This document shows positions 1-49,626 of a stretch of DNA of 64,000 nt, in pieces (the first letter of the stretch is position 1; each line of letters opens with the position of its first letter). A model generated the notes under the pieces. It was not told where the DNA came from. It saw only the letters and a program-made list of their open reading frames with translations, and searched no databases. Source of the DNA: Isurus oxyrinchus (lineage: Eukaryota); contig JANJGN010000038.1 of assembly GCA_026770705.1 (NCBI GenBank), forward strand, positions 12,710,001 to 12,774,000. Direction: 5' to 3'. Both the position numbers and the translations under genes were made by a program.

Positions 1-2985
1 CAATCTCCCGATTATCCCCAGTGCTACAGAACGGTTAGTGCAAGAGCAGCAAAATAATCCAGGTTTAATGTACGAATGACGAAACTGTTCAGAAGATGCT
101 TCAAAATATGGGGCCAATGGGACCATTTGAGAGGCTGTTCGGACCTGAAGAATGTGGACGTATTGCATACAAAGAGGACTGAAATCAATCCATCGCAGGA
201 ATATTAATCAAATCGTGGTGGAGGCTTTAAATGAGTATAGCAGAGAAGGCACATCCAACTCCACTACCCCACCACCACCACCCCCTACCCCCAACACCAC
301 CCACCCAACAGATGAAGAACTTGAGGGCAGAGAAAAGTTGCAGAGAGCGTAAAGAAACAAATTAGATTTAATTGAGGAACAGCTCCGAATTAGATAGGTT
401 GGTGCACGGAGAATTGCAAAACAATCCAAGATCACATTGTGCCCATGTGTGTTAATTCCTGGTAAATGTTAATTAACATCATTGGGCTGTAGGTACGAGA
501 GACCACGTAGCATTATGTTGTAACTGCAGTAACAGAGACCTAGGGGAAGTGAGGGAAGGCATGTCAATTTTGAAATCATGTCGACAACATTTTGAGGAAA
601 GATGAGGAAGGAAAAAAAAGGAGCGAAGGTGGAACATTTATGTAATATACTTTTTAAGCATTAGAAAGTGTTGGTGTACTTGAGAGTTCGAACACGGAAT
701 TTGTTTCAGTAGAACTGATGAATAGCAGAAACATTATTAGGTGCTAGGTGTATAAAATGGACCACAACATAGTGGGGAGGAAATGGAGGAGCAAAACTAC
801 AGGAACATCACAGAAATTTGCGAGAAATTCAGCGTATTGGCGATAGGGGGCATCATTTATTATACGAGGCTGAATGAAACTGTATCAAACAAAAAGACAT
901 GGAGTAACTCGTGCAATGTGGATAAGATAGTTCTCATGGTCTCTGTGTTTTACCCCCAATCAAGGAAGGAAGCAGTCGTATCTAGTTCTAAGGAATTATG
1001 TGAGGCATGTAGCAGACGGAGATAATATGGAAAATAATGATAATATCATTATGTTTAAAGTACATATGGATTTGTAGAAGAACTAATCATATGTGAAAAT
1101 ATTCAACGGAAGTGGCGTTAATTTTGGTGAATGGAAAGGTGACGTGCTCCAGATGGATTGACGTGAAAGACTAAGCAAATCACTAAATGAACAAGAGGAG
1201 GCTCTCTGAGTGGCGATAGTTTATTTTCATAAAGCAGACAAAGGGAATGATAAGAGATCATGTAAAAAGTGGCAAAGAGCATTTGGCAATAGATTATCAG
1301 GTAATGGAAAGGTGAGTCTAAACCTCTGTTCTAAACATGTAAAGAGAAAACATGTAGCCAAAATAAGGCTGAGTCAATTAGAAAGCGAAAGTTAACTTTA
1401 TTCTGGAGGTAGAGGGAGTACGACGTAGGGACTAAGTTAATACTTTGCAAAAGTCTTCAGGGAAGAAATTAACGCTGGAAATGTCACAGTCAGAAGGTGG
1501 CACTGGAAAGAAAATAAAAACAGAGGGGAGAAGCACAGATGCAAGGGAAGAAGTTAATGTTCTGCCAGTGCACAAGGTGAAAAATTCACCCAGTTGGATG
1601 GGATGCATCAGAAACGGATTAGTGAAGTAAGCATTACAATTGCAGATAGTCTGGACACGACGTTGCAGTTCTGCTTTGATATGGGCCTAGTTACAGGAGA
1701 ATGGAAGCTTATCAATAACGTACCCTGTCCAAAAAAAGATAACATTATGCAATTGAACTACACGTCAGCTCCCCTCGCGCCAGAGGTGGGGAATATTCCA
1801 GGAACCACAGATCAGTCTTGTCTCCAGTTCTCAGCACTAACCTTCAGGATGAAAAGGCTTAGCGACAGAAGCAATGAGAATTACTGGTATGGGACCAGGA
1901 ATAAAACATTCAGTTATGTGTTGGCACTGGAAAACCTAGTATGTTGGAATAGAAACGATTATGAGTAGATTTTAGTAAATAATGGAAAGTGCTTCCAGCA
2001 CAAGAATTGCCAGCTATTTGTCTCTGGGAGGGGGGCCTCTGAATTGGGATGTACTTTATCTGCTATGCTTGTCAAGGGTTTGAGAAGACGGAATAGAAAG
2101 CCATACACCTCAATTTGCTGACAATGATAATTTAAGCAGCACAGCAAAGAGTAGAAAGTCGCAAGTGGTCTTCCTAAAATTAAATCAATGCGGGATTGGG
2201 GTAGGCTCTGCACAACGATATGTAAAGTTCCCTATGGAAACGTGAGGTCATCTAGTCTGAAATTAAGGAAGATAGACGATTGTTATTTTCTAACAATGAG
2301 ACGATAAAAACTGTAGAACATCTCGAATAATTAGCTTTCCAACTACGGAAATCCTTAAAGTTAGTGGGAAAGGAAAACAAATAATTAAAGAAGCAAATGG
2401 ATAGTTGGCTTTAACCCTGGGCATGGGGTAGTTGGAATCCAAAGGGGTAGATACCTTGTCTCAGTTGTACAAAGCTCTCGTTACTTTGTTCACTTCTGCG
2501 AAGCCCACATCAGGAAGTGCTTGCAGGGATGGAACAGAGATTCACCAGAACAACACCGGTCACAAAATGGTTAAAATTATGCCTGCATGATCTTCACCTT
2601 CGGATTGTGTTGCCTGGACGATTACAGGGTGATCTAATTGAGTTACTTAAATAATTACTTGATATGGCTGTTAATATAGTAATAAACTAAAAACAAAAAT
2701 CTACCATATGACAACAACACGAAAAAAACCTTAAAAGTAGAGTTTGGTATTTCAGGGACGAATCGAGGGAACACTTCTTTACACATTGGCTGGATGACAT
2801 CTAAGACTCTCCCCTCAGCCCAAAAGGAAATTAAATGTGGAGGTTGGATGCCAATTTAAATGCTTACAACTGCGTTTGACAGAGTTTTGTTAGTTAGGCA
2901 TATTAATAATCCTGAAGGTAAGATGTGCTTAATTCGCTAAAGCACAGATCAGCCACAATCTGAATGAATGAAGGAGGATGGTGAG
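1..2985 (+). mobile_element. Old degenerate CR1-type LINE (end of ORF1, endonuclease and RT remnants)
   Basis: Paralogous to 16878-19800. Endonuclease-like LGVYYGPQHSG (GVYYRPP consensus) is readable in the paralog; 3' end CAGATCAGCCAC..CTGAATGAATG. Confidence 0.75.
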
Positions 2986-3962
2986 CGCCACAAACTTCCC
3001 TTTGTCTTCTTCTTGACATAATATTTACTCTTCGGTTTAATCCTAACCTTAACAGTTGTCATTTGCTAAAATTGAAGCCCAGATCTATAGTTTATTTTTC
3101 TATGATTGTGGATTTTTGGGCCAACCGACCTTCATCTTGTATCATTTGCTGATCAATTTAAAAGCTAACATTTTCTCCATTCCTTCCGTCAATCCCCTTC
3201 TCACCTATTAACAATGCTCCTGTTTGGTAGTCTTCCATAGTAAATGTTTGTTTTCATCTCTCCAACGGACACATCACCTCCTATTCTTCCCTAGTCACTG
3301 CTTTCTTCGTGTCTCCACAATGATCCATTTCCCATCATTTCATAGGGTACGCTTTCCTAATCATTTCACAGTGATTAACCTTACATCCTTGTGAGCTAGT
3401 GCTTTCCTCAACCCGCACTGTTTTCCACCTCCTAGCAATCATAATAAATGATTTTCCATTCGATTCACGTTGATCCATCTCCCATCAATCTGCAATCAAT
3501 AATTTCTTCATCTCTTTACAGTGATCCATGTTTGCATGAAAATGCTTTGCTTGTGCGCTCTGCTTTCTCTCAGAGAAAACTTCTCGTGACTTCAAAAACC
3601 TCATGGTCAATGCTTCAAGGGATTTGCCATCACATCACCAACTGGTTCAGGTCATTACCTAAAGATCCAGAATCTAGAAACAATGCATCTTTTTTTTCAT
3701 CATTGACATATTCTTCTGCTTAATGTGGCAATAATATTACTATGCATTAAGCCTTCTCCCCAATCTTCAAAATAGGGAGGCTTACAAAATATATAGATGG
3801 AAATTACTAATGAAACTCAACCTAACGCTGTGGGATAGGTTTAAATTATGCAAATATTGAAATGTTTAGTTCTTCATCTGTATCTTTGCTATATCTCGGT
3901 AAGAAATTCAACTGTTGAATAAATTTACACATTTTCCCGATACTACTGCGAGCCATCTTGAC

Positions 3963-4121
3963 CTTAAGGCCTGTCACATATGAGCTGTATATCGTACTTA
4001 GAATGAACAAAGTGACGAAAGTGACTACTGTTGATGCCGTGCCTAAATACTCGTCGAAGTTTTTTTAATCCGTCTTCCTCTACCAATTGGTCTTCCAGAC
4101 CTTCCATTATTTGAGGGAGTT
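3963..4121 (-). pseudogene. Duplicated TM1 exon (TM1'), +1 frameshift as assembled
   Basis: 159 nt versus 158 nt. By manual alignment to 22476-22633: 13 substitutions plus one extra base in the T7 run at 4060-4066. Acceptor intact; donor GTCAAG instead of GTAAAG. Confidence 0.9.
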
Positions 4122-4579
4122 CTAGAATAAATAAATGGAGTGTGTTATAAATGAGATCAGGTTGAATATAGACCAGATATAACACAAAGGCGGCAGCTGG
4201 CAGGGGTATGCTGCATTGGAAGTCAACGTAAAGGAACATGAAAATACCTTAAGTCGATTAATGTAATTTTCCAAAAACATGGGTATGATTGTTGGGTGGT
4301 GACATTGGGTGTCATACAGGGTACCTAGGTCATAGGAGTGATTTTAAATGATAATGTGTGCATCATTTGCACGTTTCCGTGAAAAATGATCAATCCCATG
4401 TGATTGAAGTTTAGTTTTTCTCCTTTAGCAGCCGATAACACCAAAATAATCAAAAATCTATTCAGAAGGTTCACTCGGCCCCTATCTGAATAGAAGGGTG
4501 GACTCAGGCTCGAATCACTTGCAGTTCACAGGCTAAATAACCTAACAGATCATCAGGAAAATGGGGCGGAGTCACAGAA

Positions 4580-5900
4580 GAATTTAGGAGGTCTTGTCAG
4601 TAGCAGAACCAGGCACACCAGAAAAAGAGGTGTCAACCTGGGGGAGCTATAACACAGGACTGCTTGCATGCCAAACAGCATAATCAGTAAGTGATAGGCA
4701 GAGCTAAGCGATCCCGCAACCAATGGATCAGTTCTGCCACATGCAGTTGTGAATCACGGTGGACAATTAAACAACTCACTGAAGGAGGAGGCTACAAAAA
4801 CATTCCCATCCTCAATGATGGAGGAGCCCAGCACATCAGTGCAATAGATACTGCTGGAGCATTTGCTGCAATCATCAACCAGAGTTGCCCAGTGGATGAG
4901 CCACCTTGGACTCATCTGTACGTCCCCAGAATCACAGATGCCAGTCTTCAGCCAATTCGATTCACTCCACGTGATCTCAAGAAAAGGCTGAAGGCATAGA
5001 ATTGTACAAATGCGACGGTCCAGGAAAATATTCTGTCAATGATACTGATGACTCGTACTCCAAAACTTGCCAGGCCACTAGCAAAGCTATGTGCTAGTTC
5101 ATCTACAACACTGGGTTGCTCAGGATAGTGACCTCGGCCCAACCACCTTCAGCTGCTTCATCAATGACCTTCCTTTCATCATAAGGTCAGAGGTGGGGGT
5201 GTTTGCTGATGATTCCACAATGTAAATACACAATTCGCGACTCCTCTGATGCTGAAGCAGTTCGTGTCCAAATGCAGCAAGACCTGTACCGTAACCTGTT
5301 TTGGACTGACAAGTAGCAATTAACAATCGTGCTACTCAAATGACAAGCTATGTCCCTCTGCAACAAGGGAGAATCTAGCCACCAATCATTACCAATGACA
5401 TTACTATCGCAGAATCCCCCGGTATCAACATCCTGGGGGTTAACATTCACCCGAAATTGAACTGGCATATAAATACTTTGACTACAAGATCAGGCCACAG
5501 GCTAGGAATCCTGGGACGAGAATCTCACCTCCTGACTCCGCAAAGTCTGTCCACCAATCTACAAAGCACAACTCAGGAGTGCCATTGGATACTCTCCACT
5601 TGCCTGCATGTGTGCAGCTCTCACAGCACTCAAGAAGCTGGAGAACATCCAGGCAAACCCGCCCACTTGATTGGCATCACATGTGCGAACATGTACCCCC
5701 TACAGCACAGTAGCATCTGTGTGCATCATCTACTAGATGCACTGCAGGAATGCAACAGGACTCCTTCGACAGCACCTTCCAAGCACATAGGCTGTGGGTC
5801 CACCTACACCACATGGCTGCAAAGCCGCTCACCAGCTCAAGGGCTATTAGGAATGGACAATAAATGCTGGCCAAGCCAGCGAAACCCACATCCTGTGACT
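4580..5900 (+). mobile_element. 5'-truncated LINE of a second family (L2/Crack-like; clade uncertain)
   Basis: RT motif GVFADD at about 5197-5214; 3' end AATAAATGCTGGCCAAGCCAGCGAAACCCACATCC shared with other copies in the window. Confidence 0.75.
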
Positions 5901-6079
5901 GAAAAGTATATGCCAGGGAATCCACTGTCTCTGGCACTTTTAGACGCCCAAGTTAAATGCCATCACGCCCTGGGAACTTGGCGGATTTCCGTTTTTTTTG
6001 TCTTCAGTAATTTTTCTGTTGATATAAATTACCTTAATTTATTCACTCTTATAAGCACTTATGTTAACTTATATTCCTG

Positions 6080-7200
6080 GTGAGCATCTTGTAATTTCCA
6101 TTGTGAAGGTACTCACCACCTCTCTGTGCAATTTCCCTGCCATCTCGTCATTCCCGGTAACAATTTCCCCTGACACTAGTAAGTGTTTACTTCAGTTACA
6201 TTCATTTTTTAACTAGTGAAAGTTTTTACAATCTGTTTTATGCTCCTGTCTAGTGTGCTCTGCAATTGAATGCTTTCCCCCCTTTTTAACAACTTTTGGC
6301 TGATCCTTTCATTCTTTGTAATACAATCTTAATCCTCAGTCTTGCTCCCACTCTTTGCAACATTATACGTTTTTCTTTTTAATCTGATACCATCTTTACT
6401 TCCTGAGTAATACTCGGATGTGATTTTTCTTGTTGAGTTTTTGGTTTTACAATCGAATGAATTTTGTCCAAAAATATGAATTGTTCCTTGAAATTGTTCC
6501 CACTGTTTATTTACTACCATAACTGTAATTCGTTTACCCCAACCACACTTACTCAGTCCTCTCCTCATTCCTAAATAATTGGTTTTATTTAAATTGAATG
6601 TTATTGTTTGGTAGAATATGTCGCTCTCAAGCTTAACGTGGAAGTTAAATGCATAACGATCAGCAGCTCCCAGTGGATCTTTAATAATGTCCCATTTTCC
6701 GCGAAGCATTGTTCCAAGAAATAATCATCTTCTTGACGACCCTTGTCAATTTGTTATGCCTTATTTTTATGAGGATTAAAATTCCCCAGTTTTATTAAAT
6801 AGCCTTTGTGACAGGTTCCAATAATTTCTTGTTTAATGCTCTTTGCAACTGTTAGGTTCTCCTAGTGGATGTATAACCTACTCCCACCAGGGTTTACTGA
6901 CTCTCTTTGTCCAAAATATTCACCTAACCAGATTCCACTGCATCATCTTCTGATCCAAGGCCCTTGCTCACAAAGGTCCTTATGCCATCATTTACTATCA
7001 GGACCGCTTGGCAATTCAGTCTGCATTTGAAACATATTGCGTAGCCTGGAATACTTATACTACAACCTTAGTCACCGTGCAGCTCTGTTTCTGTATTGAC
7101 GAATAGCTGTTAGTTGTTTATCTCGATTTGTGACAATAGTTCATCGACTTATCGTTTGTGAGTGTATTTCTGTATCCTGACAAGGATAATTTAGTTTAAT
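6080..7200 (-). mobile_element. Degenerate CR1-type LINE, endonuclease region
   Basis: ORF 6329-6709 (FNLNKTNYLGMRRGLSKCGW) resembles CR1 ORF2 just after the endonuclease. Confidence 0.55.
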
Positions 7201-8559
7201 TTCGGCGACTATTGCCTGAATGTTATTTTTTCACTTTCTGATGCAGGATTACTGTTCAACTCTTTGCACCTTCCTGATCTGCTCTGCTGGTTTTTAGTTT
7301 GTTCCATTGCCTTGACTTTTATCTTCATATTTCTATACCTCCCTTCACACAGACTCTGCTCCCACCCTACATTTGACGAAGTAACAGAAACCCTAGTTAT
7401 ACAGTTCACCATGACACTGCCAACAGCCATGTTTCAGCACAGCCTGTGCCAATTGAACAATCCTATCTTTAATGGGTGCTTGTGCCGCTTCCCCATGAAT
7501 GCCGTCTTTCTGCTCATTCAAGTAGGCCACAAGCACATCTGTCTCTTGGGCAAATTCAAGGGCTCTGAACTCACCATCAGTATCTACAGCATACTGATCC
7601 CTGCCTATCTCACAGTCATAATCCGCTGTCTCTGGTAATTGCAAGACTCTAACTTTCTACTTGGCCTAAAGGGCTGAGAGAGGTTCCTGGAACACAATGT
7701 CTGGATAGCGATCCCCCTCCCAGACGCTACACAAAGTCTGGGTCTCTGGCTTCTGCTTGCGGTCGAATGCCTTTAAGGAGCCTATCTATAACTACTGTAC
7801 ACTATCAGAGAGTTTGCGATGTACATGCTCAATTAATCATCACGCTGAAGATATGAGCAGCTCGAGGGACAGGACCTGTCAGCGCACTTGCAGAGATTGG
7901 TGCATGTGGTTTCACCCCATGAAATAAAAGAGCCCACATAATTGTGTTACCAATCTTCTTGGTTGTGGTATCTGTGTGTCGCAGAAACCAAAACATTGCT
8001 CAATAGATCAGAGGCGAAATCTCTTGCCACAGATTTAGTTTTTTGGGATTGCAATCATTCCACAGATTCTGATGTTTTTGAATTAAAGCACGCCAGTATG
8101 ACTGTCATGGCTGAATAATCTTATTTAATGAACAAATCAATTATATACTAATTGATACAGCTAAACTAGTAGCAAGTTATCCCCCATAGATTTTTGGCAG
8201 AAAAAAACCTACCTGCTACTGAAGGCCCCAGAATGGTACAAAAAGTGCATCTCCTTCTTCCTTTGCACCGATTTCCCACTTAAACCAAATTCCCAAATTG
8301 GCTTTTGTTCCTCGTCGCAGGCAAGCCTTGTCATCTCACTTTGTCATCTCACACTGTATAATTCTCTCGAGAGAGCAGATGGCGCAAACCAAGATGCAAC
8401 TGCTAAGTCAGCTGTCTGCTCCAGTAAATAACATCTATTCAGGTAGCAACTTTCAGTTGGCTGACTGATAACTGAAAGTGACATAGGCGTTTCTGTTAAC
8501 TATGCCTGTTAACAAGCACACCTAAGTTTCATATCAGAGAGTGACTGCTAATCTGAATT

Positions 8560-13973: not shown

Positions 13974-13979
13974 TTTATT
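13974..13979 (-). terminator. Poly(A) signal of membrane IgNAR mRNA
   Basis: AATAAA on the minus strand about 280 nt after the TM2 stop codon. Confidence 0.65.
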
Positions 13980-14257
13980 TTAATTGATTCTGTGGGATTT
14001 GCTGAACATACAGGGTTGTTGTAATGATGCACAATTCTATTTAGCTCTGCTGCTTAAGAAAGAAAGTGTTAATTTATGAGCTAATAGAAGCAAATTAAGC
14101 AGAGTTGCCACGGATTGGCTGAGACTATTGTGCAACCACAAGGTGAAGTGGTGTAATGGAGCAGCTGCTAACGCTGATAGACTCACACAATCCGGCCCCA
14201 AGGGATCCGTCACAAGCTTTGAAGAGAAAGCTGAAGTGACCACTGCTCAAGCAGTTG

Positions 14258-14266
14258 CTATTTCAC
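14258..14266 (-). CDS. IgNAR: IgNAR TM2 exon, coding part (VK-stop)
   Basis: TTTTTTTCACTGCAG|GTG AAA TAG. Completes the KVK cytoplasmic tail typical of IgM-like membrane heavy chains; phase 0 matches TM1. Confidence 0.88.
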   Translation of the reverse strand: MK

Positions 14267-15458: not shown

Positions 15459-15602
15459 NNNNNNNNNNNNNNNNNNNNNNNNNNNNNNNNNNNNNNNNNN
15501 NNNNNNNNNNNNNNNNNNNNNNNNNNNNNNNNNNNNNNNNNNNNNNNNNNNNNNNNNNNNNNNNNNNNNNNNNNNNNNNNNNNNNNNNNNNNNNNNNNNN
15601 NN
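15459..15602. other. Assembly gap (144 N) in the TM1-TM2 intron
   Basis: Run of N in the sequence. Confidence 1.
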
Positions 15603-16299: not shown

Positions 16300-19200
16300 C
16301 AGCATGAATAAAATAATAAACATGAGTAAGGTACGATGGAACTCAAACAACTCGTGTACATTAACCGAGGAGCAGCTGGAGTTACTGCGGGCCTCAGAAT
16401 CTCCTGAAGTGCATTAATTACAGGAGGTTGTCATCCTGCCGATCCAGTGTTCAGGATGTTTGTAAATGGTTGGCCATCCGATAGGTTAAGGAAATGCTCA
16501 CAGTGCAGGAATCCTCCAGGGTTATTACATATTCAAATCAGTTTGCAGGGCTTTGAGTAGAGCTGTCTAGTAATCATCCACGTGACTATGGGCGAGATTG
16601 AAACACGTCAGTGAATCACAAAGTGGAGGATTGCAGTTTGTTAGGAAACCTGATATTCCACAGAATTGGCCGGCGTTTCTGCCACCACCAACATGAGTTA
16701 CACTTTACCTCAATTGTGCCAAAGTCAGTAACATCATTGAGTGGATGAAGAAGATTTTGAGAAGGAAAGGAAAATGACCAAATATCACTGTCCATGTTTC
16801 AACCAATGATACAGGTAGGGAAAGGATTGAGGTAGACCGAAATAGTTTCAGCACCTAGCGCACAACCTTCATGTTGGCAATCCCCCGATTATCCCCAGTG
16901 CTACAGAACAGTTAGTGCAAGAGCAGCAACATAAATCAGGTTAATGTACGAGTGGTGAAACTGTTCAGAAGATGCTTCAAAATATGGGGCCAGTGGGGCC
17001 ATTTGAGGGGTTGCTGGGACCTGAACAAGGTGGACACCTTGCACACAAAGAGGACTGGAATCAATGCCGTCGCAGAAATAATAACCAAATCGTGGCGGAG
17101 GGTTTAAATGAGAATGGCAGAGGTGGTCCATTCCCCACCCAGCAGATGAAGAATTAGAGGGCAGAGAAAAGTTGCAGAGAGCGTAAATACACAAACTGGA
17201 TTTGATTGAAGTACAGCTCCGAGTTAGAAGGGTTAATAAAAGAAGAATTGCAAAACAATCCACGATCACGTTGTGTCCATGTGTGTTAATTCCCGGTAAA
17301 TTTTAATTAACATCATTGGGCTGCAGGCACGAGAGGCCATATAGTATTATGTTGTAACCGCAATAACAGAGAACTAGGTGAGATGAAGGAAGAAATAACA
17401 ATTTTGTAATCATGTCGACAATGCTTTGAGGTAAGATGAGGAAGGGAAAAAGGAGGGAGGGTGGTACTTTTATCAAATATATTTTTTAAGTACGAGAAAG
17501 TGTTGGTGCACTTGAGAGTTCAAACACGGAATTTGTTTCAGTAGAACTGATGAATAGCAGAAAAGACTATTAGGTGCTAGGTGTATACTATGGACCACAA
17601 CATAGTGGGGAGGAAATGGAGGAGCAAAACTACAAGAACATCACAGAAATTTGCGAGGCATTCGGCGTATTGGCGATAGGGGGCATCATTTATTATATGA
17701 GGCTGAATGAAACAGTATCAAACAAAAAGACATGGAGGAACTCCTGCAATGTAGAGAAGATAGTTCTCGTGGTCACTGTGTTTTACCTCCCAGCAAGGAA
17801 GGAAGCGGTGGCGAATCTAGCTCTAAGGAATTAAGTGAATCATGTAGCAGACGGAGATAATATGGGAAACGACTGATAATATTATTATGTTTAAAGTACA
17901 TATGGATTCGTAGGACTAATCATTTGTGAAAATATTCAATGGAGGTGGCGTTAATTTCGTTGAATGGAAAGGTGACGTGCTCCAAATGGATTGAAATGAA
18001 AGACTGAAAGCAAAACACTAAATTAACAAAAGGAGGCTCTCTGAGTGGTGATAGTTTATTTTCATAAAGCAGACAAAGGGAGTGATAAGAGATCATGTAA
18101 AAGTGGCAAAGAGCATTTCGCAATAGATTATCTGGTAACAGAGAGGTGAGTCTAAACCTCTGTTCTAAACTTGTAAAGAGAAAACGTGTAGCCAAAGTAA
18201 GAGTGATCCGATTAGAAAGCGAAAGGTAACTCTGTTCTGGAGGCAGAGGGAGCGACTTTGGGACTAAGTTAATACTTTGCATATGTCTTCAGGGAAGAAG
18301 ATAACGCTGCAAATGTTACAATCAGGAGGTGACACTGGAAAGACAAAACAGAGAGGAGAAACACAGATGCAGGGGAAGAAGATAATGTTCTGCCAGTGCG
18401 CAAAGTGAAAAATTCACCCAGCTGGATGGGATACATCCGAAACAGATTAGTGAAGTAGGATTACAATTACAGATAGTCTGGACACAACGTTCCAGTTCTG
18501 CTTTGATATGGGTCTAGTTACAGGGGAATGGGAGCTTATCAATGACACGCCCTGTCCAAAAATAGGATCACATTATGCAGTTGACCTACACGTCAGCTCC
18601 CCTCGCGCCAGAGGTGGGGAATATTCCACCAACTATGGATCAGTATTGCCTCCAGTTCTGACCACTACCCTGCAGGATGTAAAGGCTTAGTGACAACAGC
18701 AATGAGAATTACTGGAATGGCACCAGGAATAAAAATGTCAGTTATGTATTGGCACTGGAAAACCTGGTATATTGGGATATAAACTATTATGAGTAGATTT
18801 TAGTAAATAATGGAAAGAGCTTCCAGTGTTAGAATAGTCAGCTAATTATCTCTGCAAGGGAGTCCTCTGAATTGGGATGTAGATTTTTTGTGATGCTTGT
18901 CAGTGGTTTGTGAAGACGGAATAGAGAGCCATACATCTCAGTTAGCTGACAATGCTAACTTAAGCAGCACAGCAAAGAGCAGAAAGTCACAAACGGTCTT
19001 CCTAATATTAAATCAATGGGGGATTGGGGTAGACTCTGCACAATGATAGGTAAATTTGCCTGTGGAAACCTGAGGTCATCTAGTCTGAAACTAAGGAAGA
19101 TATACGATTGTTATTTTCTAACAATGAGACGATTAAAACTATAGAACATCTGGAATAATTAGCTTTACAACTACAGAAATGCTTAAAGTTAGTGGGAAAG

Positions 19201-19810
19201 AAATACAAATAAGTAAAGAAGCAAATGGACAGTTTGCTTTAATCCCAGGCGTGGGGCAGGTGGAATACAAAGCAGTAGACCTAATTTCTCTGTTGTACAA
19301 AGCTTTCGTTACTGTGTTCGGTTCTGGGAAGCCCACATCAGGAAGTGCGTGCAGGGATGGAACAGGGATTCACCAGAAAGACACCGGTTATAAAACGGTT
19401 AAAATTATGCTAACATGATCTTCACATTTGGATTGTGTTGCCTTGAATATTACAGGATGAACTACTTTAGTTGCTTAAATAATTGCTTGGTATGGCTGTT
19501 AATATAGTAATAATTTAAAAACAAAAATCTACCATATGCCAACAACATGAAAAAAAAACTTAAAAGTAGATTTGGCTACTTCAGGGACAAATCGAGGGAG
19601 CACTTCTTTACACATTGGCTGGACACAATCTAAGACTTTCCCCACAGCCTAAAAGGAAATTAAAATGTCGAGGTTGGATTCCAATTTAACTGCGTTTGAC
19701 AGAGCTTTGTTAGTTAGGCATATTAATAAACATGACGGCAAGGTATGCTTAATTCGCTAAAACACAGATCAGCCACTATCTGAATGAATGAAGGAGGATG
19801 GTGAGCGCCA
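16300..19810 (+). mobile_element. Old degenerate near-full-length CR1-type LINE (ORF1 esterase, endonuclease and RT remnants)
   Basis: ITVHVSTNDTGR at about 16784-16819 (SGNH-esterase VHVGTND motif of CR1 ORF1); LGVYYGPQHSG in ORF 17574-17834. Confidence 0.75.
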
Positions 19811-20207
19811 CAAACTTCCCTTTGTCTTCTTCTTGACATAATCTTTCCTCTTCGGTTTAATCCTAACCTTAACTGTTGTCATTTGCTAAAATTGAAGCCC
19901 AGATCTATAGTTCATTTTTCTATGATTGTGGATTTTTGTGCCAACCAACCTTAGTATTGTATTATTTGCTTATCGATTGAAAACCTAACATTTTCTTCAT
20001 TCCTTCCGTAGTCAATTCCCTTCTCACCTGTTAACAATGTTCCTGTTTGGTAATCTTCCATAGTCAATGTTTGTTTTCATCTCTCCAACGGCCACATCAC
20101 CTCCTATTCTTCCATAGTGACTGCTTTCCTCATCTCTCCACAGTGATCCATTTCCCATCATTTCATATGTTACACTATCCTAATCATTTCACAGTGATTC
20201 ACCTCAC

Positions 20208-21904
20208 AACCATAAGACCATAAGACATAGGAGCAGAAATTAGGCCACTCGGCCTATTGAGTCTGCTTCGCCATTCAATCTTGGCTGATAAGTTTCTCAA
20301 CCATTTCTCCCGCCTTCTCCCTGCAACCTTTGATCAGCTTACCAATCAAGAACCTATCTATCTCGGTCTTAAATACACTGAATGACCTGGCCTCCACAAC
20401 CTTCTGTGGCAATGAATTCCATAGATTCACCACTCTCTGGCTAAAGAAGTTTCTCCTCATCTCTGTTCTGACAGGTCTTCCCTTTACTCTGAGGCTGTGC
20501 CCTCGGGTCCTAGTCTCTCCTACTAATGGAAACATCCTCCGCACATTCACTCTATCCAGGCCTTTCAGTATTCTGTAAGTTTCAATCAGATCCCCCCTCA
20601 TCCTGCTGAACTCTATAGAGTATAGACCCAGCGACCTCTAATATTCCGCATATGTTAAGCCTTTCATTCCTGGGATCATTTTTGTTAACCTCCTCTGGGC
20701 CCTCTCCAGGGCCAGCACATCCTTCCTGAGATACAGCGCCAAAAATTGCTCAAAATGTTCTAAATGTGGTCTGACCAGAGCGTTATGAAGCCTCAGCAGC
20801 ACATCCTTGCTTTTATATTCTAGTCCTCTCAAAATAAATGCCAACATTGCAATTGCCTTACTAACTACCCACTCAACCGGCAAGTTAACCTTAAGAAAAT
20901 CCCTTTGCACTCCAGATTTCTGAATTCTCTCCGCATTTGGAAAATAGTCTATGCCTCTATTCTTCCTACCAAAGTGCATGACCTCGCACTTCCCCACGTT
21001 GTATTCTATCTGCCACTTCTTTGCCATTCTCCTAACCTGTCCAAATCCTTCTGCAGCCTCCCCGCCTCCTCAATACTACCTGTCCCTCCACCTATCTTTG
21101 TATTATCTGGAAACCTAGCCAGGATGCCCTCAGTTCCTTCATCGAGTTCATTAATGTATAAAGTGAAAAGTTGTGGTCACAACACTGACCCCTATGGAAC
21201 TCCACTAGTCACTGGCCATCATCCTGAGAAGAATCCCCTTATCCCCACTCTCTGCCTCCTGCCAGACAGCCATCTTCTATCCATGCTAGTAGCTTGCCTC
21301 TAACAGCATGGGCTTTTATCTTACTGAGCAGCCTCCTGTGCGGCACCTTGTCAAAGGCCTTCTGGAAGTCCAAGTAGATAACATCCATTGGCTCTCCTTT
21401 GTCTAACCTACTCGTTACAACCTCAAAGAATTCTAACAGATTTGTCAGGCATGACCTCCCCTTGATGAAACCATACTGACTTTGCCCTTTTACCATGCAC
21501 TTCCAAGTATTCTGAAATCTCAACCTTTATATTGGGCTCTAAAATCTTACCAATGACCGAGGTCAGGCTAAACGGCCTGTAATCTCCCATCTTTCGCGTC
21601 ATTCCCTTCTTAAACAGAGGGCTTACATTTGCAATTTTCCAGTCCTCTGGGACCCTCCCTGACTCGAGTGATTCCTGAAAGATCACAAACAACCACCTCC
21701 ACTGTCTCTTCAGCTATCTCCTTCAGAATTCTTTGGTGTAATCCATCTGGTCCAGGACATTTATCCACCTTCAGAACTTTCAGTTTTCCAAGCACCTTCT
21801 CCTTGGTAATGGCAACATACTCATCTCTACCCCCCCCCCCCACCCCCCCACCCTCCGACTCTCTTGAACTTTGGGGAGGTTACTCGTGTCTTCCACCGTG
21901 AAGA
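20208..21904 (-). mobile_element. Younger 5'-truncated CR1-type LINE inserted into duplication copy B
   Basis: ORFs with YLDFQKAFDKVPH, KCPGPDG and RGDLIETYRILKG. 3' tandem (CATAAGAC)n tail at about 20211-20230. Absent from the matching site in copy A (about 3385). Confidence 0.95.
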
Positions 21905-22475
21905 CATCATTGTGAGCTAGAGCTTTCCTCAACCCCACTGTATCCCACCTCCCAGCAATCATAATAAGTGATTTTCTCATCTATTCACATTGATCCATCA
22001 ACCATCAATTTGCAATCAATACTTTCTTCAACTCTTTAGAGTGATCCAGGTTTACATGCAAATGCTTTGCTTGTGCTTTCCCCTTTCTCTCAAACAAAAC
22101 TTCTCATGACTTCAGAAACCTCATGCTCAATACACGAGATTTGTCATCACATCACCAATTGTTTCTGATCATTAGCTTAAAGATCCAGAATCTAGAAACA
22201 ATGCACCTTTTTTCATTATTGACATATTCCGCTCCTTAATGTGGCAATAATATTACTATGCATTAGGTCTTCTCCTCAATCTTCTGAATAGGGAGGCTTA
22301 TAAAATATGTAGATGGAAATTAGTAATGAAACTCAACCTGACACTGTGGGAAAGGTTGAAATTATGCAAATATTGAAATCTTTAGTTCATCTGTATCTTT
22401 GCTATATCTCAGTAAGAAGCTCAACTGCTGAATAAATTTACACATTTTCTCGATACTACTGTGAGCCATCTTTAC

Positions 22476-22633
22476 CTTAAGGACTGTCACGTACGAGCTG
22501 TATATCATACTTAGAATGAACAAAGTGACGAAAGCGACTACTGTTGATGCAGTGCCTACATCCTCATCGAAGTTTTCTAATCCGTCTTCCTCTACTAATT
22601 GGTCGTCCATACCTTCCATTATTTGAGGGAGTT
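22476..22633 (-). CDS. IgNAR: IgNAR transmembrane exon TM1
   Basis: Acceptor TTTATTCTAG|AA, donor AAG|GTAAAG; 158 nt, phase 1-0. Acidic spacer ELPQIMEGMDDQLVEEDGLENFDED, then a CART-motif helix GTASTVVAFVTLFILSMIYSSYVTVLK. Confidence 0.95.
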
Positions 22634-25600
22634 CTAGAATAAATAAACGGAGTGTGTTATAAATGAGATCAGGTTGAATATAGACTCGATATAACATAAA
22701 GGCGGCAGCTGGCAGGGCACATGAAAAGACCTTAAGTCGATTGAAGTAATTTTCTGAAAACACGGTATGATTGTTGGGGGTGACCATCGAGGTCATACAG
22801 CTCACCTTGGATAGAGGAGTTATTTTAAATGATAATGTTTGCATTATTTGCACCGTTCCATGAAAAATGATCATTCACCTGTGACTGAAGTTTATTTTTA
22901 CTCTTTTAGCAGCCGCTAACACCAAAATAATCAAAAATCTATTTAGAAGGCGAATTCGGCACTGATCTGAATAGAAAGGTGGACTCAGGCTCGAATCACT
23001 TGCATTTCACAGGCTACACTAACCAGGAGATCATCAGGCAAATGAGGGCGGAGTCACATTTCAACTCAAGATTCAGCTGCACCTCATCGGCACAGTTTAT
23101 GTTCGCCTCTTAGGAGTTATTGACATTTTACGGCAAAGATCATTCGTCGGTAGAAACAAATGATTTCACAGTATTTAAACCGGTTAAGGTGCATATATAT
23201 TGACAGTATAATCTGAACAGCAGCATTACTCTTTACCCAATGTCATCAGATTGGATTGTTATTGATGACGTCAGCATTGCAGTATCAACATCTTTGCTAT
23301 GACTATCGCGATATATTATGTTTACAATTCTCTGGTTACACGGTTACTAAGGTCCTGTGAATTCTGGAATACATTGTGTCGTATATTTCCCTATGGCAGC
23401 TCCAGCATTATATCACAATAGCACCATAGGGATGGTTACCCTTTGGGGTAGAACTGTGAGCGCCTGGTTAAAGGTGACGTTAACAATTCCCTCAATCCCC
23501 TGAACGTGTCACTACTAACTCTCTAATTCTGCAAGCTATCCCACTGGCTGATTTTTCGATTTGTATTGAGCGCAGGTGGCTTAAGTGAATGCAGAAGCAT
23601 CGTAATTTTATGTGTACCTGCACCAAAAAAATAAACATTGTCATATTTTATCAAATTCATCGTTCTCATCAAATGCTTGTTTCCCCTCTATGAGAGTTGA
23701 ATGATTGACAAGCCTCGTTTTCTAAACAACCAAACAAGACCTTCCAATTTTACAATTCGAAAAAAATTTCGATCCTACAATACCTACTCTACCTTGAATT
23801 CTACCAGGCCATGAGCCCTTCATATATATGAGCTGATGAAGCATTGTAGGATCAGGCAATCTACAGAAATATCTGTACTGGAGTAAGACCAGCTGTTTAA
23901 GCTGTTCAGCCGGACTCGAGTCAACGCAACTGAATAGTACCGAGATAACTCAAAGACTGAAATTGTGCAGGACACGGATATAAGTTGTGTTCACTTACCT
24001 ATTGCACTTGAACGTGTGCCAAGTAGGGGATATTACGTGTAATATCCACAGCTTCACCAAACACTCGGCAGATAGATAGGCCGAATGGCCTCCTTCTTTT
24101 CCTGGATAACTGCCACTCTATGAGCATCCAACATCGATAGCTGCCAGACCCTTTAGAAGACTGCTTCCTTCACTCAGCGAGATATTTTCCAGCATGGAGT
24201 GATCCCACAAGACATAAAAGAGCAGCTCCAACTACTGGAGGTTCAGAGACTCAGCAACATTTGCTTAACTCTGGGCAGGTACATCAATAGTCACCTGGGC
24301 ATATATTCTCTACATGGCCATGCATACATTTTTCGATGACATGGCTGAGATTTCAGATCAACAATGGATGAAGTATTGTACTCCTGCTATGTTTCTCACT
24401 TAGTAAACCCAGTATAACAGAAAGTTATGCGAGAATGCACTGTCCAGAAGGTGAATTGTGCAATGATCCCTGGTTGACATGTTTTTGTTTGCCCATCGAA
24501 ACTTTATTGGGTCTTTTTCAGATTCCGAGGATGTTTGTGGACTGCCTGGTAAGGCGACCTACCAACCAACTCTCTGATCTGCGCCTTTAATTTTAGTGTA
24601 TTTTTCAACAGGGCACAATGAATAGCGGCCTGATGCACGTAAACAAGGGGGAAGAAAAAACAGCGCAACTATTGGCAACACGAATGCGACCAGTTGATTT
24701 ACTGCAGACTGAGATTCTCCTTGAAAAATCAGTTCTTGGTGCCTCCGCTTCGCATTGGACATACGGACAGATTGTGTGCTAAATTATGTGAGCTGAGCAA
24801 GGTTGACGATGGTGGCAACAAAGTCATGTCCTGCTTCATAGGTAACCTTTCACTGATTCAGAATTTCCCAAATACTTCATGGGGAAATAAGAATACTTTT
24901 TCAAAAATTTAAATACTTTAGTGTTTGAGTCCACAGCAAATTAAACTAAAATAACACCCCGAAAAAAACTAAAGGAGCAAATAGGAAGACAGTCTATATA
25001 ATGCTGTGTCTGGATATAATAGAGATAACAGACTCTGGAAGATATCACTGCTCCTGCAATTCTGCATGGAGTCTTCAACATGCGCCGGAACTATCGGATC
25101 GGGTCAAGAATATGCTTTTCAAATGAAACACAGCAGCACTGAGACTTCACTACCCTTCACACCGTTCGACTGCAATATGAGCCTCGATCAAGTGCCAGAA
25201 TTGTGGAAAGGAGATTAATCCACAACCTTCTGATTCAGAAGCCAGGGAAATGTTAATGATGTCCGCTATGATTAAAAATAAAAATACGGGGATAATTTCA
25301 AATCAATGCGCATCTCCGAATGCGATCTTTGGAAATTATACATATCGATCATTCATTGCACAACAACATCAAGTTGCAGCTTTGCAGCACGATAAACGTG
25401 GGGAAAAAGCCTCGAGGTGTTTTATAGGAGCAAAATCAGACAGCACCTGATGCCAAGTGAAGGAAGATCCAATCAGGTCAAGTAAACAAATCTTTGTAAA
25501 ATATCGTTTCTTTAATGTGCTTCTTGAAGTAGCAGAGATAGGTAAAAGCAGCGCACAGGTTTAACGATGCATGTGTAGAGCTTAGTGTTTGGGCAGTTGA

Positions 25601-27230: not shown

Positions 27231-27236
27231 TTTATT
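27231..27236 (-). terminator. Poly(A) signal of secretory IgNAR mRNA
   Basis: AATAAA on the minus strand about 225 nt after the secretory stop codon. Confidence 0.75.
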
Positions 27237-27461
27237 GCAATCAGTTGTGCCACATACAGACAAACTAACCATGCGTCACTAAACCCTTCATGAGTTTTTG
27301 ATAATATGGCAACTTGTATAAAATGCGAACAGTCATTCGCTGCCCTGGAGGGTGATTGTGAGGTCAGATGTTTGGGAGATTTGTTGATTCCAATGTTGAA
27401 ATAATTAGGAACCTCACAGCGGTGACATTTCTACAGGAAAGGCCTGGTCAATCATGGCGGG

Positions 27462-27844
27462 TTATGTACACGATTTAACACTGTCAGTTAGGAGAAGCGA
27501 AACATTAACTAAAGTAGGTTTACCGTGGGATTTATTAATACTTCGGATTAAATTCCTCTCGAGGGACGGGTGGCCCACTAAACAGGAGTAAGTGGTGCCA
27601 GTGTTCCACTCGGCTGCGGTGAGTCTCAATCTGCCGGCTAAGAAGCTGGAACCATTTCCCTTCTCACTCTCCAGTTGGCTCGGATGACCTGAATCCAGAA
27701 GGGTGTCATTGGCCATCCAAGCGATGTAAATCTCAGCAGGATAAAAACCGGTGGCGAGACACACCAGCGTTGCCGTATTCTCAGTGTCGATCTCATCCTC
27801 TGACGGAGACAGAATGTAGACTTTGGGACTAATCATTGTGCCAA
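27462..27844 (-). CDS. IgNAR: IgNAR constant exon C5 plus secretory tailpiece
   Basis: Acceptor TTTACAG|TT. Encodes VGTMISPKVYILSPSEDEIDTENTATLVCLATGFYP...YSCLVGHPSL...KSHGKPTLVNVSLLLTDSVKSCT*, with NVS sequon and penultimate Cys. An internal donor CAC G|GTAAAC at 27524/27523 serves the membrane form. Confidence 0.98.
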
Positions 27845-28289
27845 CTGTAAAGAGAGAAATATACAAATATTTTTTTAAACTGACTCTGTCTATTGTTTGG
27901 TCTTCACTATACATTTTCTTCTCTTAGAAGTACCATATGTTTGGAAATGTGGAATATTTCCTATCTCATAGGTTTAAAAATCTTTTTCCTTGCACATGGC
28001 TCTCATTCATATTTTTTCTTTTTATTGTTTGCATTGTGGCCCTATTTTTTTCCCCATAGAGTTGGGGAAAGCATTTTAAAGAAATGCTGACACTGTTGGA
28101 CTTGGGGATGCAGCAGTTTCAGATTTCTTACATTTTCTTTACCATAGTTTTCATCAACGTGGTGACTGGTTGGACCCGGGACTGTATCTCATTGATTATA
28201 CTAGAATTTAACGTTTGGCCTGCTTTTTATTTTCGTTTGGGGCCATTGGCAATTGGACCAGTCCCTGAACGAGTGTTATCTGTGCTTAC

Positions 28290-30728: not shown

Positions 30729-32082
30729 CCCGTTATGAGTGGGTCAGCAGGGACAGAGTGCATCAGCAGCCTATTTTACCGAGAATGCATCACAGCCCAG
30801 TCGACTCTTGCCATCAGCAGATGTCCAAACATGTCGACTCCGACGATGGCCACTCAGGCCGTAGGAGGAGCAAAGAAAGGGTCCCTCACCTGTTACCAGA
30901 TACGCCCGGACCACTGTACCTTCCAAGAGTCACCGGTTCAGTGTGGTTAACCCAGTGATGAAAAACAGCCTCATTGAGGGAACATTATTATGAGTTGGTT
31001 CACATTACAGTGCATAGGTGCTCAGCGATCAGATGGAGCTCGAGCTTTAAGAGTCTGGGGCTCCGTCAGTCGAAGTATTTGCCCTGTTATTGCCACTGCT
31101 CACTATTGAGTTCTGTTCATCACCTCTCGAACCTCAGCTAATGGTTGTTCCCAATGAACCCACATAGGCAGAAAATATCAGCAATTTATTATGCCCTGAA
31201 TGCATCGCACCCAATTTTAACATTCATTCCAAACTGGCACATCGGTAGCTACCGTAGATTGGGAATCAAACCAATGACCATTCCTACTGCACAAACGAAG
31301 AGATACCGAGGCCAATTACCAGACACCAAAGGTCAATATCAACGAACTCAGCAAAGTACCTCCAGCTTCCTGGGAAATCTGAGAATTCCCAGCCAATCAC
31401 TGAGGCGCTGGGCAATTATTGTGCAGGGTTTTTTTAGCCTTCACTTAAAAAATACTACACCGCCGGAAATGAAAATGTTGATCAGAGGAGATTAAATTGA
31501 TCAAAATAAATTGTCACTTCATTAGGTTCAGTCCATGAGGACGTTATTTGCCCAGGCCTGTGACCTCTAATGCATTTGTTGCAGTAGCTTTCAAGACTAG
31601 AAACATACAAAACGGCTTCGATTGTTCAACTCCCTGGTGACTGGCTGCTTCTGGTTCTGAACTCACTGCTGAAAAGCAGTCACTGTTGTAGTTTTCTAAA
31701 AAAGAAATGAAACAGGGAAGTGGACCGCGCAAAGTCTTAACCCCACTTTGTGGAACAGAGTGTCCCTTAAGGTGTGCTTAGCACCATCTAAATAAAGCGC
31801 TCATTTCCAGAAAACTGAGAAGTTAAGTCTCAAACATTCTTATCCTTCCCCTTATCATCACTGGATTCTCAAATTGCTTGTGGAGGCGGACATATTGAGT
31901 GCTGAGCACTGTACCATCTCTGTGCTGTCTGGGAGATCAGGCCACATTAATTGGTTCCCATACGTTATTTAGTCCCTGCAACCTGGAGGAATGTACTTGC
32001 TAGTGTGGTGGTTCTTCGGTGTTGCTGTCAATTTAAGTACAAACCTTGAATGTGGAAATGCAATCTGAGAAACTGTTTTTAC

Positions 32083-32400
32083 CTTTCGTGTTGCTGATGG
32101 TCATATTTTCTGTGGATTGTGTAGGTGGGTGTGAGGCGGCACAGGTGTATCTTGCTCCTGACTTCCATTCCGCTTCAGGTAAAATGAGGAGGCTCTTTGA
32201 ACTGAAGGTCTGGTCCTGTTCAAGGGCCGTGGGGAAACTGCTGATGTTCGACCTCAAAGCAGCTCCGTTCTTCTGCCAGGAAATTATTATTTTGTCCGGG
32301 TAGAATCCTCTTATCAAACAAGTGAGGGTTGCGGCTTTGGTGCTTTGAATTTCTTCTGGTGATGGAGGCAAGAGCCGGAGCTTTGGCTCCACTGGCTCGA
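32083..32400 (-). CDS. IgNAR: IgNAR constant exon C3
   Basis: Acceptor TTTTGTTACAG|TC, donor AAA G|GTAAAA; 318 nt. Encodes VEPVEPKLRLLPPSPEEIQSTKAATLTCLIRGFYP...YTCAASHPPTQ. The C2-C3 intron is 87 nt. Confidence 0.97.
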
Positions 32401-32487
32401 CTGTAACAAAAGTTCAACCACTGTTAGTCTTAACTTCATTGCCATTGGTAAACGTATATATATATATGTAGGCATGTATAAGCTTAC

Positions 32488-49436: not shown

Positions 49437-49626
49437 GGTTCACATGCGGGGCTGTACATTGAACAACCGCACTTCAAATCCTCATTCTCACTGCGGAGAT
49501 TTCTGATCTTGAAAATATCACCAATTATTTACACAACTCCGCCGGTCTCAGATGGGAATCTGTGAGTGCAACGTTTGAGTGAAAAAACGAAGCAGTTCCT
49601 ATTTTAATCACCAGAAGATCCGAGGG

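What the first reader, a model, noticed from the sequence alone, without database searches (positions are those of the whole stretch)
1..4576. Second transmembrane cassette duplicated downstream of the IgNAR gene, with no V or C exons of its own
Seen: after TM2 and its poly(A) signal (about 14.0-14.3 kb) there is a same-orientation duplicate of the TM1 exon and its introns (1-4576, matching 16878-23058). No Ig C exon is recognisable between 4.6 and 14 kb. TM2 and TM1' lie on the same gap-free stretch, so the order TM2 then TM1' is not created by the N gap. Removing one base from the homopolymer at 4060-4066 restores a full membrane exon (ELPQIMEGLEDQLVEEDGLKNFDEYLGTASTVVTFVTLFILSTIYSSYVTGLK) with CART residues and acceptor intact; 5 of the 13 substitutions are synonymous. 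Known: an IgNAR cluster normally has one TM1/TM2 pair. Inference: this is either a tandem membrane cassette giving one VDJ-C unit alternative 3' ends, or the stump of a neighbouring cluster that lost V-C.
Basis: partly seen in the sequence, partly recalled or inferred. Interest (0 to 1): 0.75.

Follow-up and report, generated by a model that had tools for sequence, protein, structure and literature searches.

The report
Decaying spare membrane exon behind IgNAR
Downstream of a shark single-chain antibody (IgNAR) gene lies a real, old second copy of the exon that anchors the antibody in the cell membrane, but this copy is frameshifted, has a weakened splice site and evolves like junk DNA, so it is most likely a dead leftover of a duplication.

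Summary
Window 1-4576 is a same-orientation copy, 85-89% identical, of 16878-23058. That region is the TM1 membrane exon and flanking introns of a minus-strand IgNAR gene. The copied exon (TM1', 4121..3963) keeps its acceptor but has one extra base, which shifts the frame. No V or C exon lies in 1-15458. TM2 and TM1' sit on one gap-free stretch.

- The donor is AAG|GTCAAG instead of AAG|GTAAAG.
- All 5 replacement changes that could be polarised lie on the TM1' branch.
- Exon divergence (13 of 158) and indel load (1 seen, 1.03 expected) do not differ from the introns.

Public contigs show the copy is not an assembly artefact. Run X2 holds copy-specific contigs with 0 of 266 and 1 of 346 differences, and a second organism label holds both sequence types. 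The extra base could not be checked in X2, and the nearest copy-like contigs of the second organism lack it. The one RNA-like run laid held no membrane-exon contig, so expression is untested.

Verdict: most likely a decaying relic of a tandem duplication of the gene's 3' end. Use as an alternative 3' end is unsupported but not excluded.

The parts
1..4576 (-). Copy B: second, downstream copy of the TM1 exon plus flanking intron sequence. It runs off the window's left edge.
   Evidence: Self-blastn gives four collinear blocks at 85-89% identity to 16878-23058. The global alignment has 494 mismatches in 4310 non-exon aligned positions, K2P about 0.12. X2 holds copy-B-specific contigs at 3156-3421 (0 differences) and 4177-4522 (1 difference).
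3963..4121 (-). TM1' pseudo-exon (159 nt). The acceptor is intact, the frame is shifted by one extra base, and the shifted frame stops 1 nt before the exon end.
   Evidence: tblastn with TM1 hits it in two frames.
4060..4066 (.). T7 homopolymer (A7 on the coding strand) that carries the frameshift. Copy A reads AGAAAA here.
   Evidence: In X5 and X7, 2 of 2 contigs each lack one T and have C at 4065. X2 had no contig over 4022-4065.
3957..3962 (-). Donor of TM1': GTCAAG, with C at +3 where copy A has GTAAAG.
4576..4577 (.). Sharp upstream end of the homology, the duplication junction. A very high-copy repeat starts about 35-80 nt further on.
   Evidence: Searches show no resumption of homology. 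Depth jumps from roughly 1e2 to 1e5-1e6 from the bin 4608-4674 onwards.
16878..23058 (-). Copy A: the gene's own TM1 exon with flanking introns.
22476..22633 (-). TM1 exon of the IgNAR gene (158 nt, phase 1, open). It encodes an acidic membrane-proximal stretch and a TM helix.
   Evidence: It is 57% identical to the C-terminus of P0001, a V-C1-C2-C3-TM IgNAR. The only PDB hits are membrane Ig heavy chains, with weak E-values of 0.17-1.7.
20211..21909 (-). Retroelement fragment (reverse-transcriptase ORFs) present only in copy A, so inserted after the duplication or lost from B.
   Evidence: 1698-nt gap in B. RVT_1 match, E 4e-8, at 21242-21526.
14258..14266 (-). TM2 (GTG AAA TAG, Val-Lys-stop) behind a pyrimidine tract and CAG acceptor.
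   Evidence: No transcript evidence.
13974..13984 (-). Overlapping ATTAAA/AATAAA poly(A) signals about 280 nt after TM2.
27465..27845 (-). C5 exon with secretory tail. The internal TM donor has its last base at 27524 (phase 1).
32036..32413 (-). Open frame holding C3. The donor's last base is 32083 (phase 1), usable for the short membrane form.
   Evidence: P0001 shows the C3-to-TM architecture in a relative.
15459..15602 (.). Assembly gap inside the TM1-TM2 intron of copy A.
   Evidence: Not filled or looked up.

Best explanation
TM1' is a non-functional, decaying pseudo-exon. It was left by a tandem segmental duplication of the 3' membrane end of the IgNAR gene.

Inferred sequence of events:
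- A unit starting about 425 nt upstream of TM1 (window 23058) and ending at 4577 was copied head-to-tail. It contained TM1, the TM1-TM2 intron, TM2, its poly(A) site and about 9.4 kb of 3' flank.
- The second TM1 therefore lies about 9.9 kb past the gene's membrane poly(A) signal.
- Transcripts normally end before reaching it.
- The upstream TM1 acceptor differs at only 1 of the 36 positions compared, so it would be used first.
- The second copy escaped selection.

What is shown directly: the duplicate, the sharp junction, the lesions, and neutral-looking divergence. What is inferred: the size of the unit, the lack of use, and the mechanism.
For: - The duplicate is in the same orientation with a sharp junction, and no homology resumes beyond it.
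- No V or C exon lies in 1-15458.
- The window carries a frameshift and a +3 A>C donor change.
- Exon divergence is 13 of 158 (8.2%) against 494 of 4310 (11.5%) outside it. Binomial p is 0.12 and Fisher p is 0.25.
- The exon ranks at the 20th percentile of all 158-nt windows, and 4 of 28 non-overlapping windows are as similar or more similar.
- One indel event is seen where 1.03 are expected from the introns.
- There are 5 synonymous changes over 34.7 sites and 8 replacement changes over 124.3 sites. That gives a raw ratio of about 0.45, as expected if one copy is constrained and the other is free.
- With P0001 as outgroup, 5 of the 8 replacement differences can be polarised. All 5 are derived in TM1' and none in TM1. 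E20, M43 and V51 of TM1 sit at positions also conserved or hydrophobic in human membrane mu and gamma chains.
- The copy is real. X2 holds copy-B-specific contigs with 0 of 266 and 1 of 346 differences, at word depths (186-194) like those of the A-type contigs (191-202). The tool warns that depth is a poor measure. X5 and X7 of another organism label hold both A-type and B-like contigs, including the B-specific 29-nt segment 4207-4235.
- There is a precedent for an orphaned, pseudogenised Ig TM1 exon in killifish IGHZ (PMC7287348, passages read).
Against: - The extra T was not verified. X2 had no contig over 4022-4065 among the roughly 50% of its contigs that were read.
- In X5 and X7, 2 of 2 contigs each lack the extra T. 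An open-frame B-like exon therefore exists somewhere in a relative.
- At three places the window's letter is unsupported by every contig laid there: 3422, 3978 and 4227. The window may carry private variants or consensus errors.
- The exon is slightly, though not significantly, less diverged than its flanks, and the core TM motif letters survive.
- Expression is untested. The only RNA-like run (X8) held neither TM1 nor TM1' contigs.
- The cis arrangement rests on the assembly alone.
- There is only one outgroup sequence.
Confidence: 0.62

Rival explanations
1. Stump of a neighbouring IgNAR cluster. A whole cluster was duplicated in tandem, and a later deletion removed V through C5 and most of the C5-TM1 intron of the downstream copy, leaving only its membrane cassette. 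The present state is the same, a dead relic. Only the history differs.
For: - Shark Ig genes multiply as whole clusters, and incomplete IgNAR clusters are reported in bamboo shark: 3 of 7 incomplete (PMC8692893, passages read).
- The layout in the window fits equally well.
- Unchecked first-reader notes list further orphan Ig TM cassettes in this genome.
Against: - It needs two events where one suffices.
- No remnant of any V or C exon lies in 4.6-14 kb, even at E 0.47.
- The junction at 4576/4577 is a single clean break.
Confidence: 0.2
2. Functional second membrane cassette. The frameshift is an assembly error or a private allele, and the TM1'/TM2' pair gives the same VDJ-C unit an alternative 3' end. 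That could be a membrane anchor with a different face, or, if the frameshift is real, a tail-less secreted form ending in a 52-residue basic tail.
For: - The acceptor is intact and its phase is compatible with the C5 and C3 donors.
- The core TM motif letters are retained when read across the break.
- The nearest B-like contigs of organism B lack the frameshift, 2 of 2 in X5 and 2 of 2 in X7.
- Unchecked notes say other IgNAR clusters of this genome also carry a second cassette.
Against: - The donor is weakened.
- All 5 of the 5 polarisable replacements are on this copy, several at conserved positions.
- Divergence and indel load cannot be told from the introns.
- It lies 9.9 kb beyond the poly(A) signal and behind an almost identical acceptor.
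- No transcript evidence exists (uninformative).
- An open 158-nt frame surviving by chance is not unlikely. The probability of no indel is 0.36 for the whole A-B distance.
Confidence: 0.1
3. Assembly artefact: a falsely duplicated or misplaced contig.
For: - The window's letters at 3422, 3978 and 4227 are unsupported by any contig laid there.
- An N gap lies inside the gene.
- The cis arrangement was not tested with long reads.
Against: - The copies differ by about 11.5%, by 28 indel events and by a 1.7-kb retroelement. That is far beyond haplotype or error level.
- Copy-B-specific contigs occur in X2 and B-like ones in X5 and X7.
- TM2 and TM1' share one gap-free contig.
Confidence: 0.03

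Closest known systems
Orphaned, pseudogenised IGHZ-TM1 exon of the killifish Austrofundulus limnaeus (PMC7287348)
   Same: A lone Ig heavy-chain TM1 exon without constant-domain exons, read as a relic of locus turnover.
   Different: That exon is what remains after an isotype was lost. Here the intact parent gene sits directly upstream, and the orphan is a tandem paralogue of its own TM1. The host is an elasmobranch minicluster, not a teleost translocon locus.
Canonical IgNAR cluster (V-D-D-D-J-C1-5, one secretory tail, one Tm), as described for the white-spotted bamboo shark (PMC8692893)
   Same: The upstream gene in the window has this layout. It has a phase-1 C5 internal donor and C3 donor that can both feed TM1. 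This matches the 5-C and 3-C membrane forms cited in the review PMC5192425.
   Different: The published description gives one Tm per complete cluster. The window has a second TM1 copy behind TM2.
Ig heavy-chain M1/M2 membrane exons of tetrapods (human mu and gamma chains in BCR cryo-EM entries 7xq8, 7wso and others)
   Same: TM1 shares the acidic E-x-G-x-EN stretch and the F-x-x-LF-x-LS-x-x-YS-x-x-VT-x-x-K pattern. TM2 encodes Val-Lys-stop, as I recall for mouse mu M2.
   Different: Sequence similarity is weak, with E-values of 0.17-1.7. TM1' has K, T and G where these relatives keep E, a hydrophobic residue and a hydrophobic residue.

Membership tests
Ig heavy-chain TM1 (M1) membrane exon | AG acceptor in phase 1, compatible with the donor inside the last C exon | tested here: met
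   The ttctag| acceptor is shared by both copies. The C5 donor (27524) and C3 donor (32083) are phase 1.
Ig heavy-chain TM1 (M1) membrane exon | One open frame encoding an acidic membrane-proximal stretch plus a TM helix with the conserved antigen-receptor motif | tested here: not met
   TM1 (copy A) meets it. TM1' is split over two frames by one extra base, and the first frame ends in a stop. The motif itself is recalled, not taken from a call.
Ig heavy-chain TM1 (M1) membrane exon | Good GT donor leading to a short TM2 exon and a poly(A) site | tested here: inconclusive
   The donor is GTCAAG with C at +3. The predicted TM2' lies outside the window.
Tandem segmental duplication | Two copies in the same orientation with a discrete junction between the tail of unit 1 and the head of unit 2 | tested here: met
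Tandem segmental duplication | The second unit repeats the rest of the first (TM2', 3' flank) and ends at the equivalent of the junction | not testable with these tools
   Copy B runs off the window's left edge at position 1.
Pseudo-exon or relic (non-functional duplicate) | Disabling lesion present in the organism, not only in the assembly | tested here: inconclusive
   X2 had no contig over 4022-4065. X5 and X7 contigs (2 of 2 each) lack the extra T but are 4-5% from the window's copy, so they may be paralogues.
Pseudo-exon or relic (non-functional duplicate) | Evolves like the neighbouring non-coding DNA | tested here: met
   Divergence is 8.2% against 11.5% (p 0.12 and 0.25), the exon is at the 20th percentile, and 1 indel is seen against 1.03 expected. 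All 5 polarisable replacements are on this copy and none on TM1. The exon is small, so power is low.
Alternative 3'-terminal exon cassette in use | Transcripts spliced from a C exon into the cassette | tested here: inconclusive
   The one RNA-like run (X8) laid contigs only on the repeat at 4608-5000, with none on TM1' and none of TM1 type either. The other three runs behaved as DNA.

The most novel reading that the evidence does not exclude
The second membrane cassette is an old, standing part of the IgNAR cluster unit in this shark lineage. It would be present behind several clusters and in a related organism, with some copies keeping an open frame and working splice sites. B cells would occasionally read past the first membrane poly(A) site and splice C3 or C5 to it. 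The result would be an IgNAR receptor with an altered membrane-proximal and TM face (E>K, M>T, V>G) and so different coupling to the signalling partners. From frameshifted copies such as this one, the result would be a tail-less secreted chain.
Probability: 0.07. Interest if true: 0.7.

Novelty: new member of a known kind. Interest (0 to 1): 0.3.

Why it matters
- For annotation: gene predictors and readers may attach TM1' to IgNAR models, or count it as evidence of a further cluster. It should be flagged as a pseudo-exon.
- For evolution: an approximately 12%-diverged second cassette travelling with the cluster would be a handy marker for ordering the IgNAR cluster duplications. It also adds an elasmobranch case to the orphan Ig membrane exons known from teleosts.
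- If the minority reading were right, it would be the first antigen-receptor gene I know of with two alternative membrane anchors. That would bear on how single-chain receptors couple to signalling partners.
- In the held library I found no description of such a duplication.

Tried and rejected
- RNA test. I chose the run query on C4-C5 (window 27000-28700) to get runs that hold IgNAR exons, then laid X2, X8, X5 and X7 on 3000-5000 at likeness 88, so that TM1-type contigs would serve as a positive control. X5 and X7, which I had hoped were RNA, behaved as DNA, with contigs on introns. X8 held no membrane-exon contig of either type.
- T6 versus T7. Not resolvable. X2 had no contig over 4022-4065, and only about 50% of its contigs were read.
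- More outgroups. The search of 1.84 billion representatives with TM1 gave 1 hit, P0001. A word search with its TM region found only itself, 1 scoring protein among 2 candidates. A search with the 170-aa open frame around TM1 gave nothing among 27 candidates. The polarisation therefore rests on one outgroup.
- Homology beyond the junction. blastn with word size 9 of 4577-15458 against 15603-64000 found only 5 short repeat-like matches. Short-word blastn around the breakpoints found nothing beyond 4576/23058.
- Rfam on 1-24000: 0 matches. Tandem repeats in the window: 0 rows.
- Pfam on 10 open frames: only 2 weak to moderate RVT_1 matches.
- Earlier findings by place (near) and by sequence were blank. 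Word look-ups gave unchecked first-reader titles only.
- Age estimate. I rejected giving a number, because I have no sourced substitution rate for this lineage.
- I rejected calling the organism-B contigs orthologues. They are 3.4-5% from copy B, while the A-type contigs are about 1% from copy A.
- I did not build or search any joined C-to-TM model.
Full report
WHAT IS THERE

The window holds one N run, 15459-15602. A germline IgNAR gene lies on the minus strand. Open frames with the V domain are at 49611-50006, and C1-C5 lie at about 36.2-35.5, 32.9-32.4, 32.4-32.0, 28.6-28.3 and 27.9-27.5 kb. These domains cross-detect each other by tblastn.

The C5 exon has an internal donor whose last base is 27524. 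The C3 exon ends at 32083. Both are phase 1.

The membrane exon TM1 is 22633..22476 (158 nt). A CAG|GTGAAATAG acceptor plus Val-Lys-stop at 14269-14258 is the only such match in the window. It follows a pyrimidine tract, and ATTAAA/AATAAA lie at 13984-13974. TM2 is therefore a sound prediction but has no transcript evidence.

THE DUPLICATE

Self-blastn finds four collinear, same-strand blocks joining 1-4576 to 16878-23058 at 85-89% identity.

In a global alignment the copies differ at 494 of 4310 non-exon positions, K2P about 0.12. They also differ by 28 indel events outside the exon. One of these is a 1698-nt segment present only in copy A, which carries a reverse-transcriptase match (RVT_1, E 4e-8).

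Homology ends abruptly at 4576/23058 and does not resume. Only 5 short repeat-like matches join 4577-15458 to the rest of the window, and short-word blastn finds nothing beyond the break.

tblastn with V and C1-C5 finds nothing in 1-15458 (best E 0.47), while TM1 hits 3963-4122 in two frames.

THE COPIED EXON

TM1' (4121..3963, 159 nt) keeps the ttctag| acceptor. Its first 23 exon bases are identical to TM1.

It differs from TM1 by 13 substitutions, 5 synonymous and 8 replacement. It also has one extra base in a run that reads A7 on the coding strand, where TM1 reads AGAAAA. The shifted frame runs into a stop one base before the exon end.

From general knowledge of U1 pairing, C at +3 in a donor that also lacks G at +5 is weak. 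I did not score it.

IS THE EXON UNDER SELECTION?

- Exon divergence is 13 of 158 (8.2%) against 11.5% outside. Binomial p is 0.12 and Fisher p is 0.25.
- Among all 4311 sliding 158-nt windows of the alignment, 20.5% are as similar or more similar. Of 28 non-overlapping windows, 4 are.
- One indel event is seen where the intron rate predicts 1.03.
- The raw replacement to synonymous ratio is about 0.45 (8 over 124.3 sites against 5 over 34.7 sites). This sums both branches, and it is what one constrained copy plus one free copy would give.
- The single outgroup I could find is P0001, a 480-aa V-C1-C2-C3-TM IgNAR. It allows 5 of the 8 replacement differences to be polarised. All 5 (D10E, E20K, D25Y, M43T, V51G) are changes on the TM1' branch and none on TM1. 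The other 3 are uninformative.
- E20, M43 and V51 sit at positions that are E, hydrophobic and hydrophobic in human membrane mu and gamma chains. Those alignments are weak, E 0.17-1.7, but the 7 hits are all membrane Ig heavy chains of B-cell-receptor structures.

The exon is short and there is one outgroup, so these tests have low power. They all point the same way.

PUBLIC READS

The run search used C4-C5 as query and listed 24 runs. None is on record as RNA. I laid four of them on 3000-5000 at likeness 88. All are Logan contigs, so they can show presence but not absence.

X2 (organism A, about 50% of its contigs read):
- It holds copy-B-specific contigs at 3156-3421 (0 differences in 266) and 4177-4522 (1 in 346).
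- It also holds A-type contigs, for example 3722-3977 with 20 differences plus a 3-nt gap, where the A/B alignment predicts 21 plus 3.
- Their word depths are alike, 186-194 against 191-202. The tool warns that depth is a poor measure.
- It had no contig over 4022-4065, so T7 is unverified.

X5 and X7 (organism B) turned out to be DNA:
- Each holds an A-type contig over the exon. It covers 3896-4128 with 19 differences plus 1 gap, where 20 plus 1 are expected.
- Each also holds a B-like contig. In X5 it covers 3872-4121 and in X7 3872-4101, each with 11 differences plus 1 gap.
- X7 also has a contig at 4099-4259 without gaps that contains the B-specific 29-nt segment.
- In both runs, 2 of 2 contigs over the homopolymer lack one T and have C at 4065. 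That is the unshifted TM1-like state.
- The B-like contigs are 3.4-5% from the window's copy B, while the A-type contigs are about 1% from copy A. They may therefore be paralogues from another cluster rather than orthologues.
- At 3907-3915 each of the two runs has 4 different contigs, so the family has several members.

Other points from the same call:
- At 3422, 3978 and 4227 the window's letter is supported by no contig laid there.
- X8, the only RNA-like run laid (whole run read), placed contigs only on the high-copy repeat from about 4608 (6 of 30 bins). It had nothing of TM1' type and nothing of TM1 type, so it says nothing about use of either membrane exon.

READING

The copy is real and old, and it is not made by the gap. 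The simplest history is one head-to-tail duplication of a unit running from 23058 to 4577. That unit held TM1, TM2, the poly(A) site and the 3' flank.

TM1' lies about 9.9 kb past the membrane poly(A) signal and behind an almost identical acceptor. It would rarely be transcribed or chosen, and it has drifted. This last step is inference.

A whole-cluster duplication followed by loss of V-C gives the same picture. It cannot be separated from the first history without the sequence to the left.

A working alternative 3' end is not excluded, because the frameshift is unverified and informative RNA is missing. Nothing measured here favours it.

EARLIER NOTES OF THIS SCAN

Unchecked first-reader titles report a second IgNAR membrane cassette at three other places of this genome: s1-870859, s1-868837 and s1-871780, the last one 'with a stop before the membrane anchor'. 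They also report orphan IgH TM cassettes 130 kb before this window, s1-900701. I could not test them.

If true, the composite unit was copied along with the clusters, and different copies carry different lesions. That fits a relic carried passively.

LITERATURE

- The bamboo-shark locus paper describes complete clusters with one secretory and one Tm tail, and 3 of 7 clusters incomplete (PMC8692893, passages).
- The nurse-shark IgNAR localisation paper contains none of the words transmembrane, TM1, TM2, membrane or pseudogene (PMC11641339, find).
- A review states that membrane IgNAR has three or five C domains (PMC5192425, passages).
- An orphaned pseudogenised IGHZ-TM1 exon is reported in a killifish (PMC7287348, passages).
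- PMC12227049 notes that TM exons are often missed by gene prediction (passages).
- Five full-text searches found no description of a duplicated IgNAR membrane cassette. Supplements were closed, and subscription papers are not in the library.

VERDICT

TM1' is most likely an ordinary decaying duplicate, a new member of a known kind. There is a small chance that the cassette family is used in some copies.

Noticed in passing
window 2920-3133 and 19740-19953: A roughly 200-nt island in the TM1-TM2 intron is about 97% identical between the two copies, with a minimum of 4 mismatches per 158 nt against a median of 18. It may be a conserved non-coding element or a patch of gene conversion. Rfam finds nothing there.
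   Followed up: partly
window 4608-5000: A very high-copy repeat. Summed contig depth is 1e5-2e6 against about 1e2 for the neighbouring unique DNA in three DNA runs. It is also the only part of 3000-5000 covered by the RNA-like run X8. It starts 35-80 nt beyond the duplication junction.
   Followed up: partly
window 3422, 3978, 4227: The window's letter is contradicted by every contig laid there. At 3422 the counts are X2 3 of 3 and X5 2 of 2. At 3978 they are 2 of 2 in each of X2, X5 and X7. At 4227 they are 1 of 1, 2 of 2 and 1 of 1. These may be private variants of the assembled individual or consensus errors.
   Followed up: no
window 22475-22365 and 3962-3850, minus strand: In both copies the intron begins GT(A/C) AAG, which is Val-Lys, the same two residues that TM2 encodes. 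The frame then stays open for about 35 more codons. An unspliced TM1 would therefore still end in ...K-V-K plus a tail.
   Followed up: no
window 3873-3875 against 22389: Copy A of the window and of X2 lacks 3 nt that copy B has. No contig of X5 or X7 shows this deletion (0 of the depth at 3870), so it separates the two organism labels.
   Followed up: no
window 11878-12126 (+), 20211-21909 (-), and many open frames from 33.9 to 41 kb and 54 to 63 kb: Numerous reverse-transcriptase-like open frames lie in the introns and flanks of the IgNAR gene. Only two were scanned against Pfam, both matching RVT_1.
   Followed up: partly
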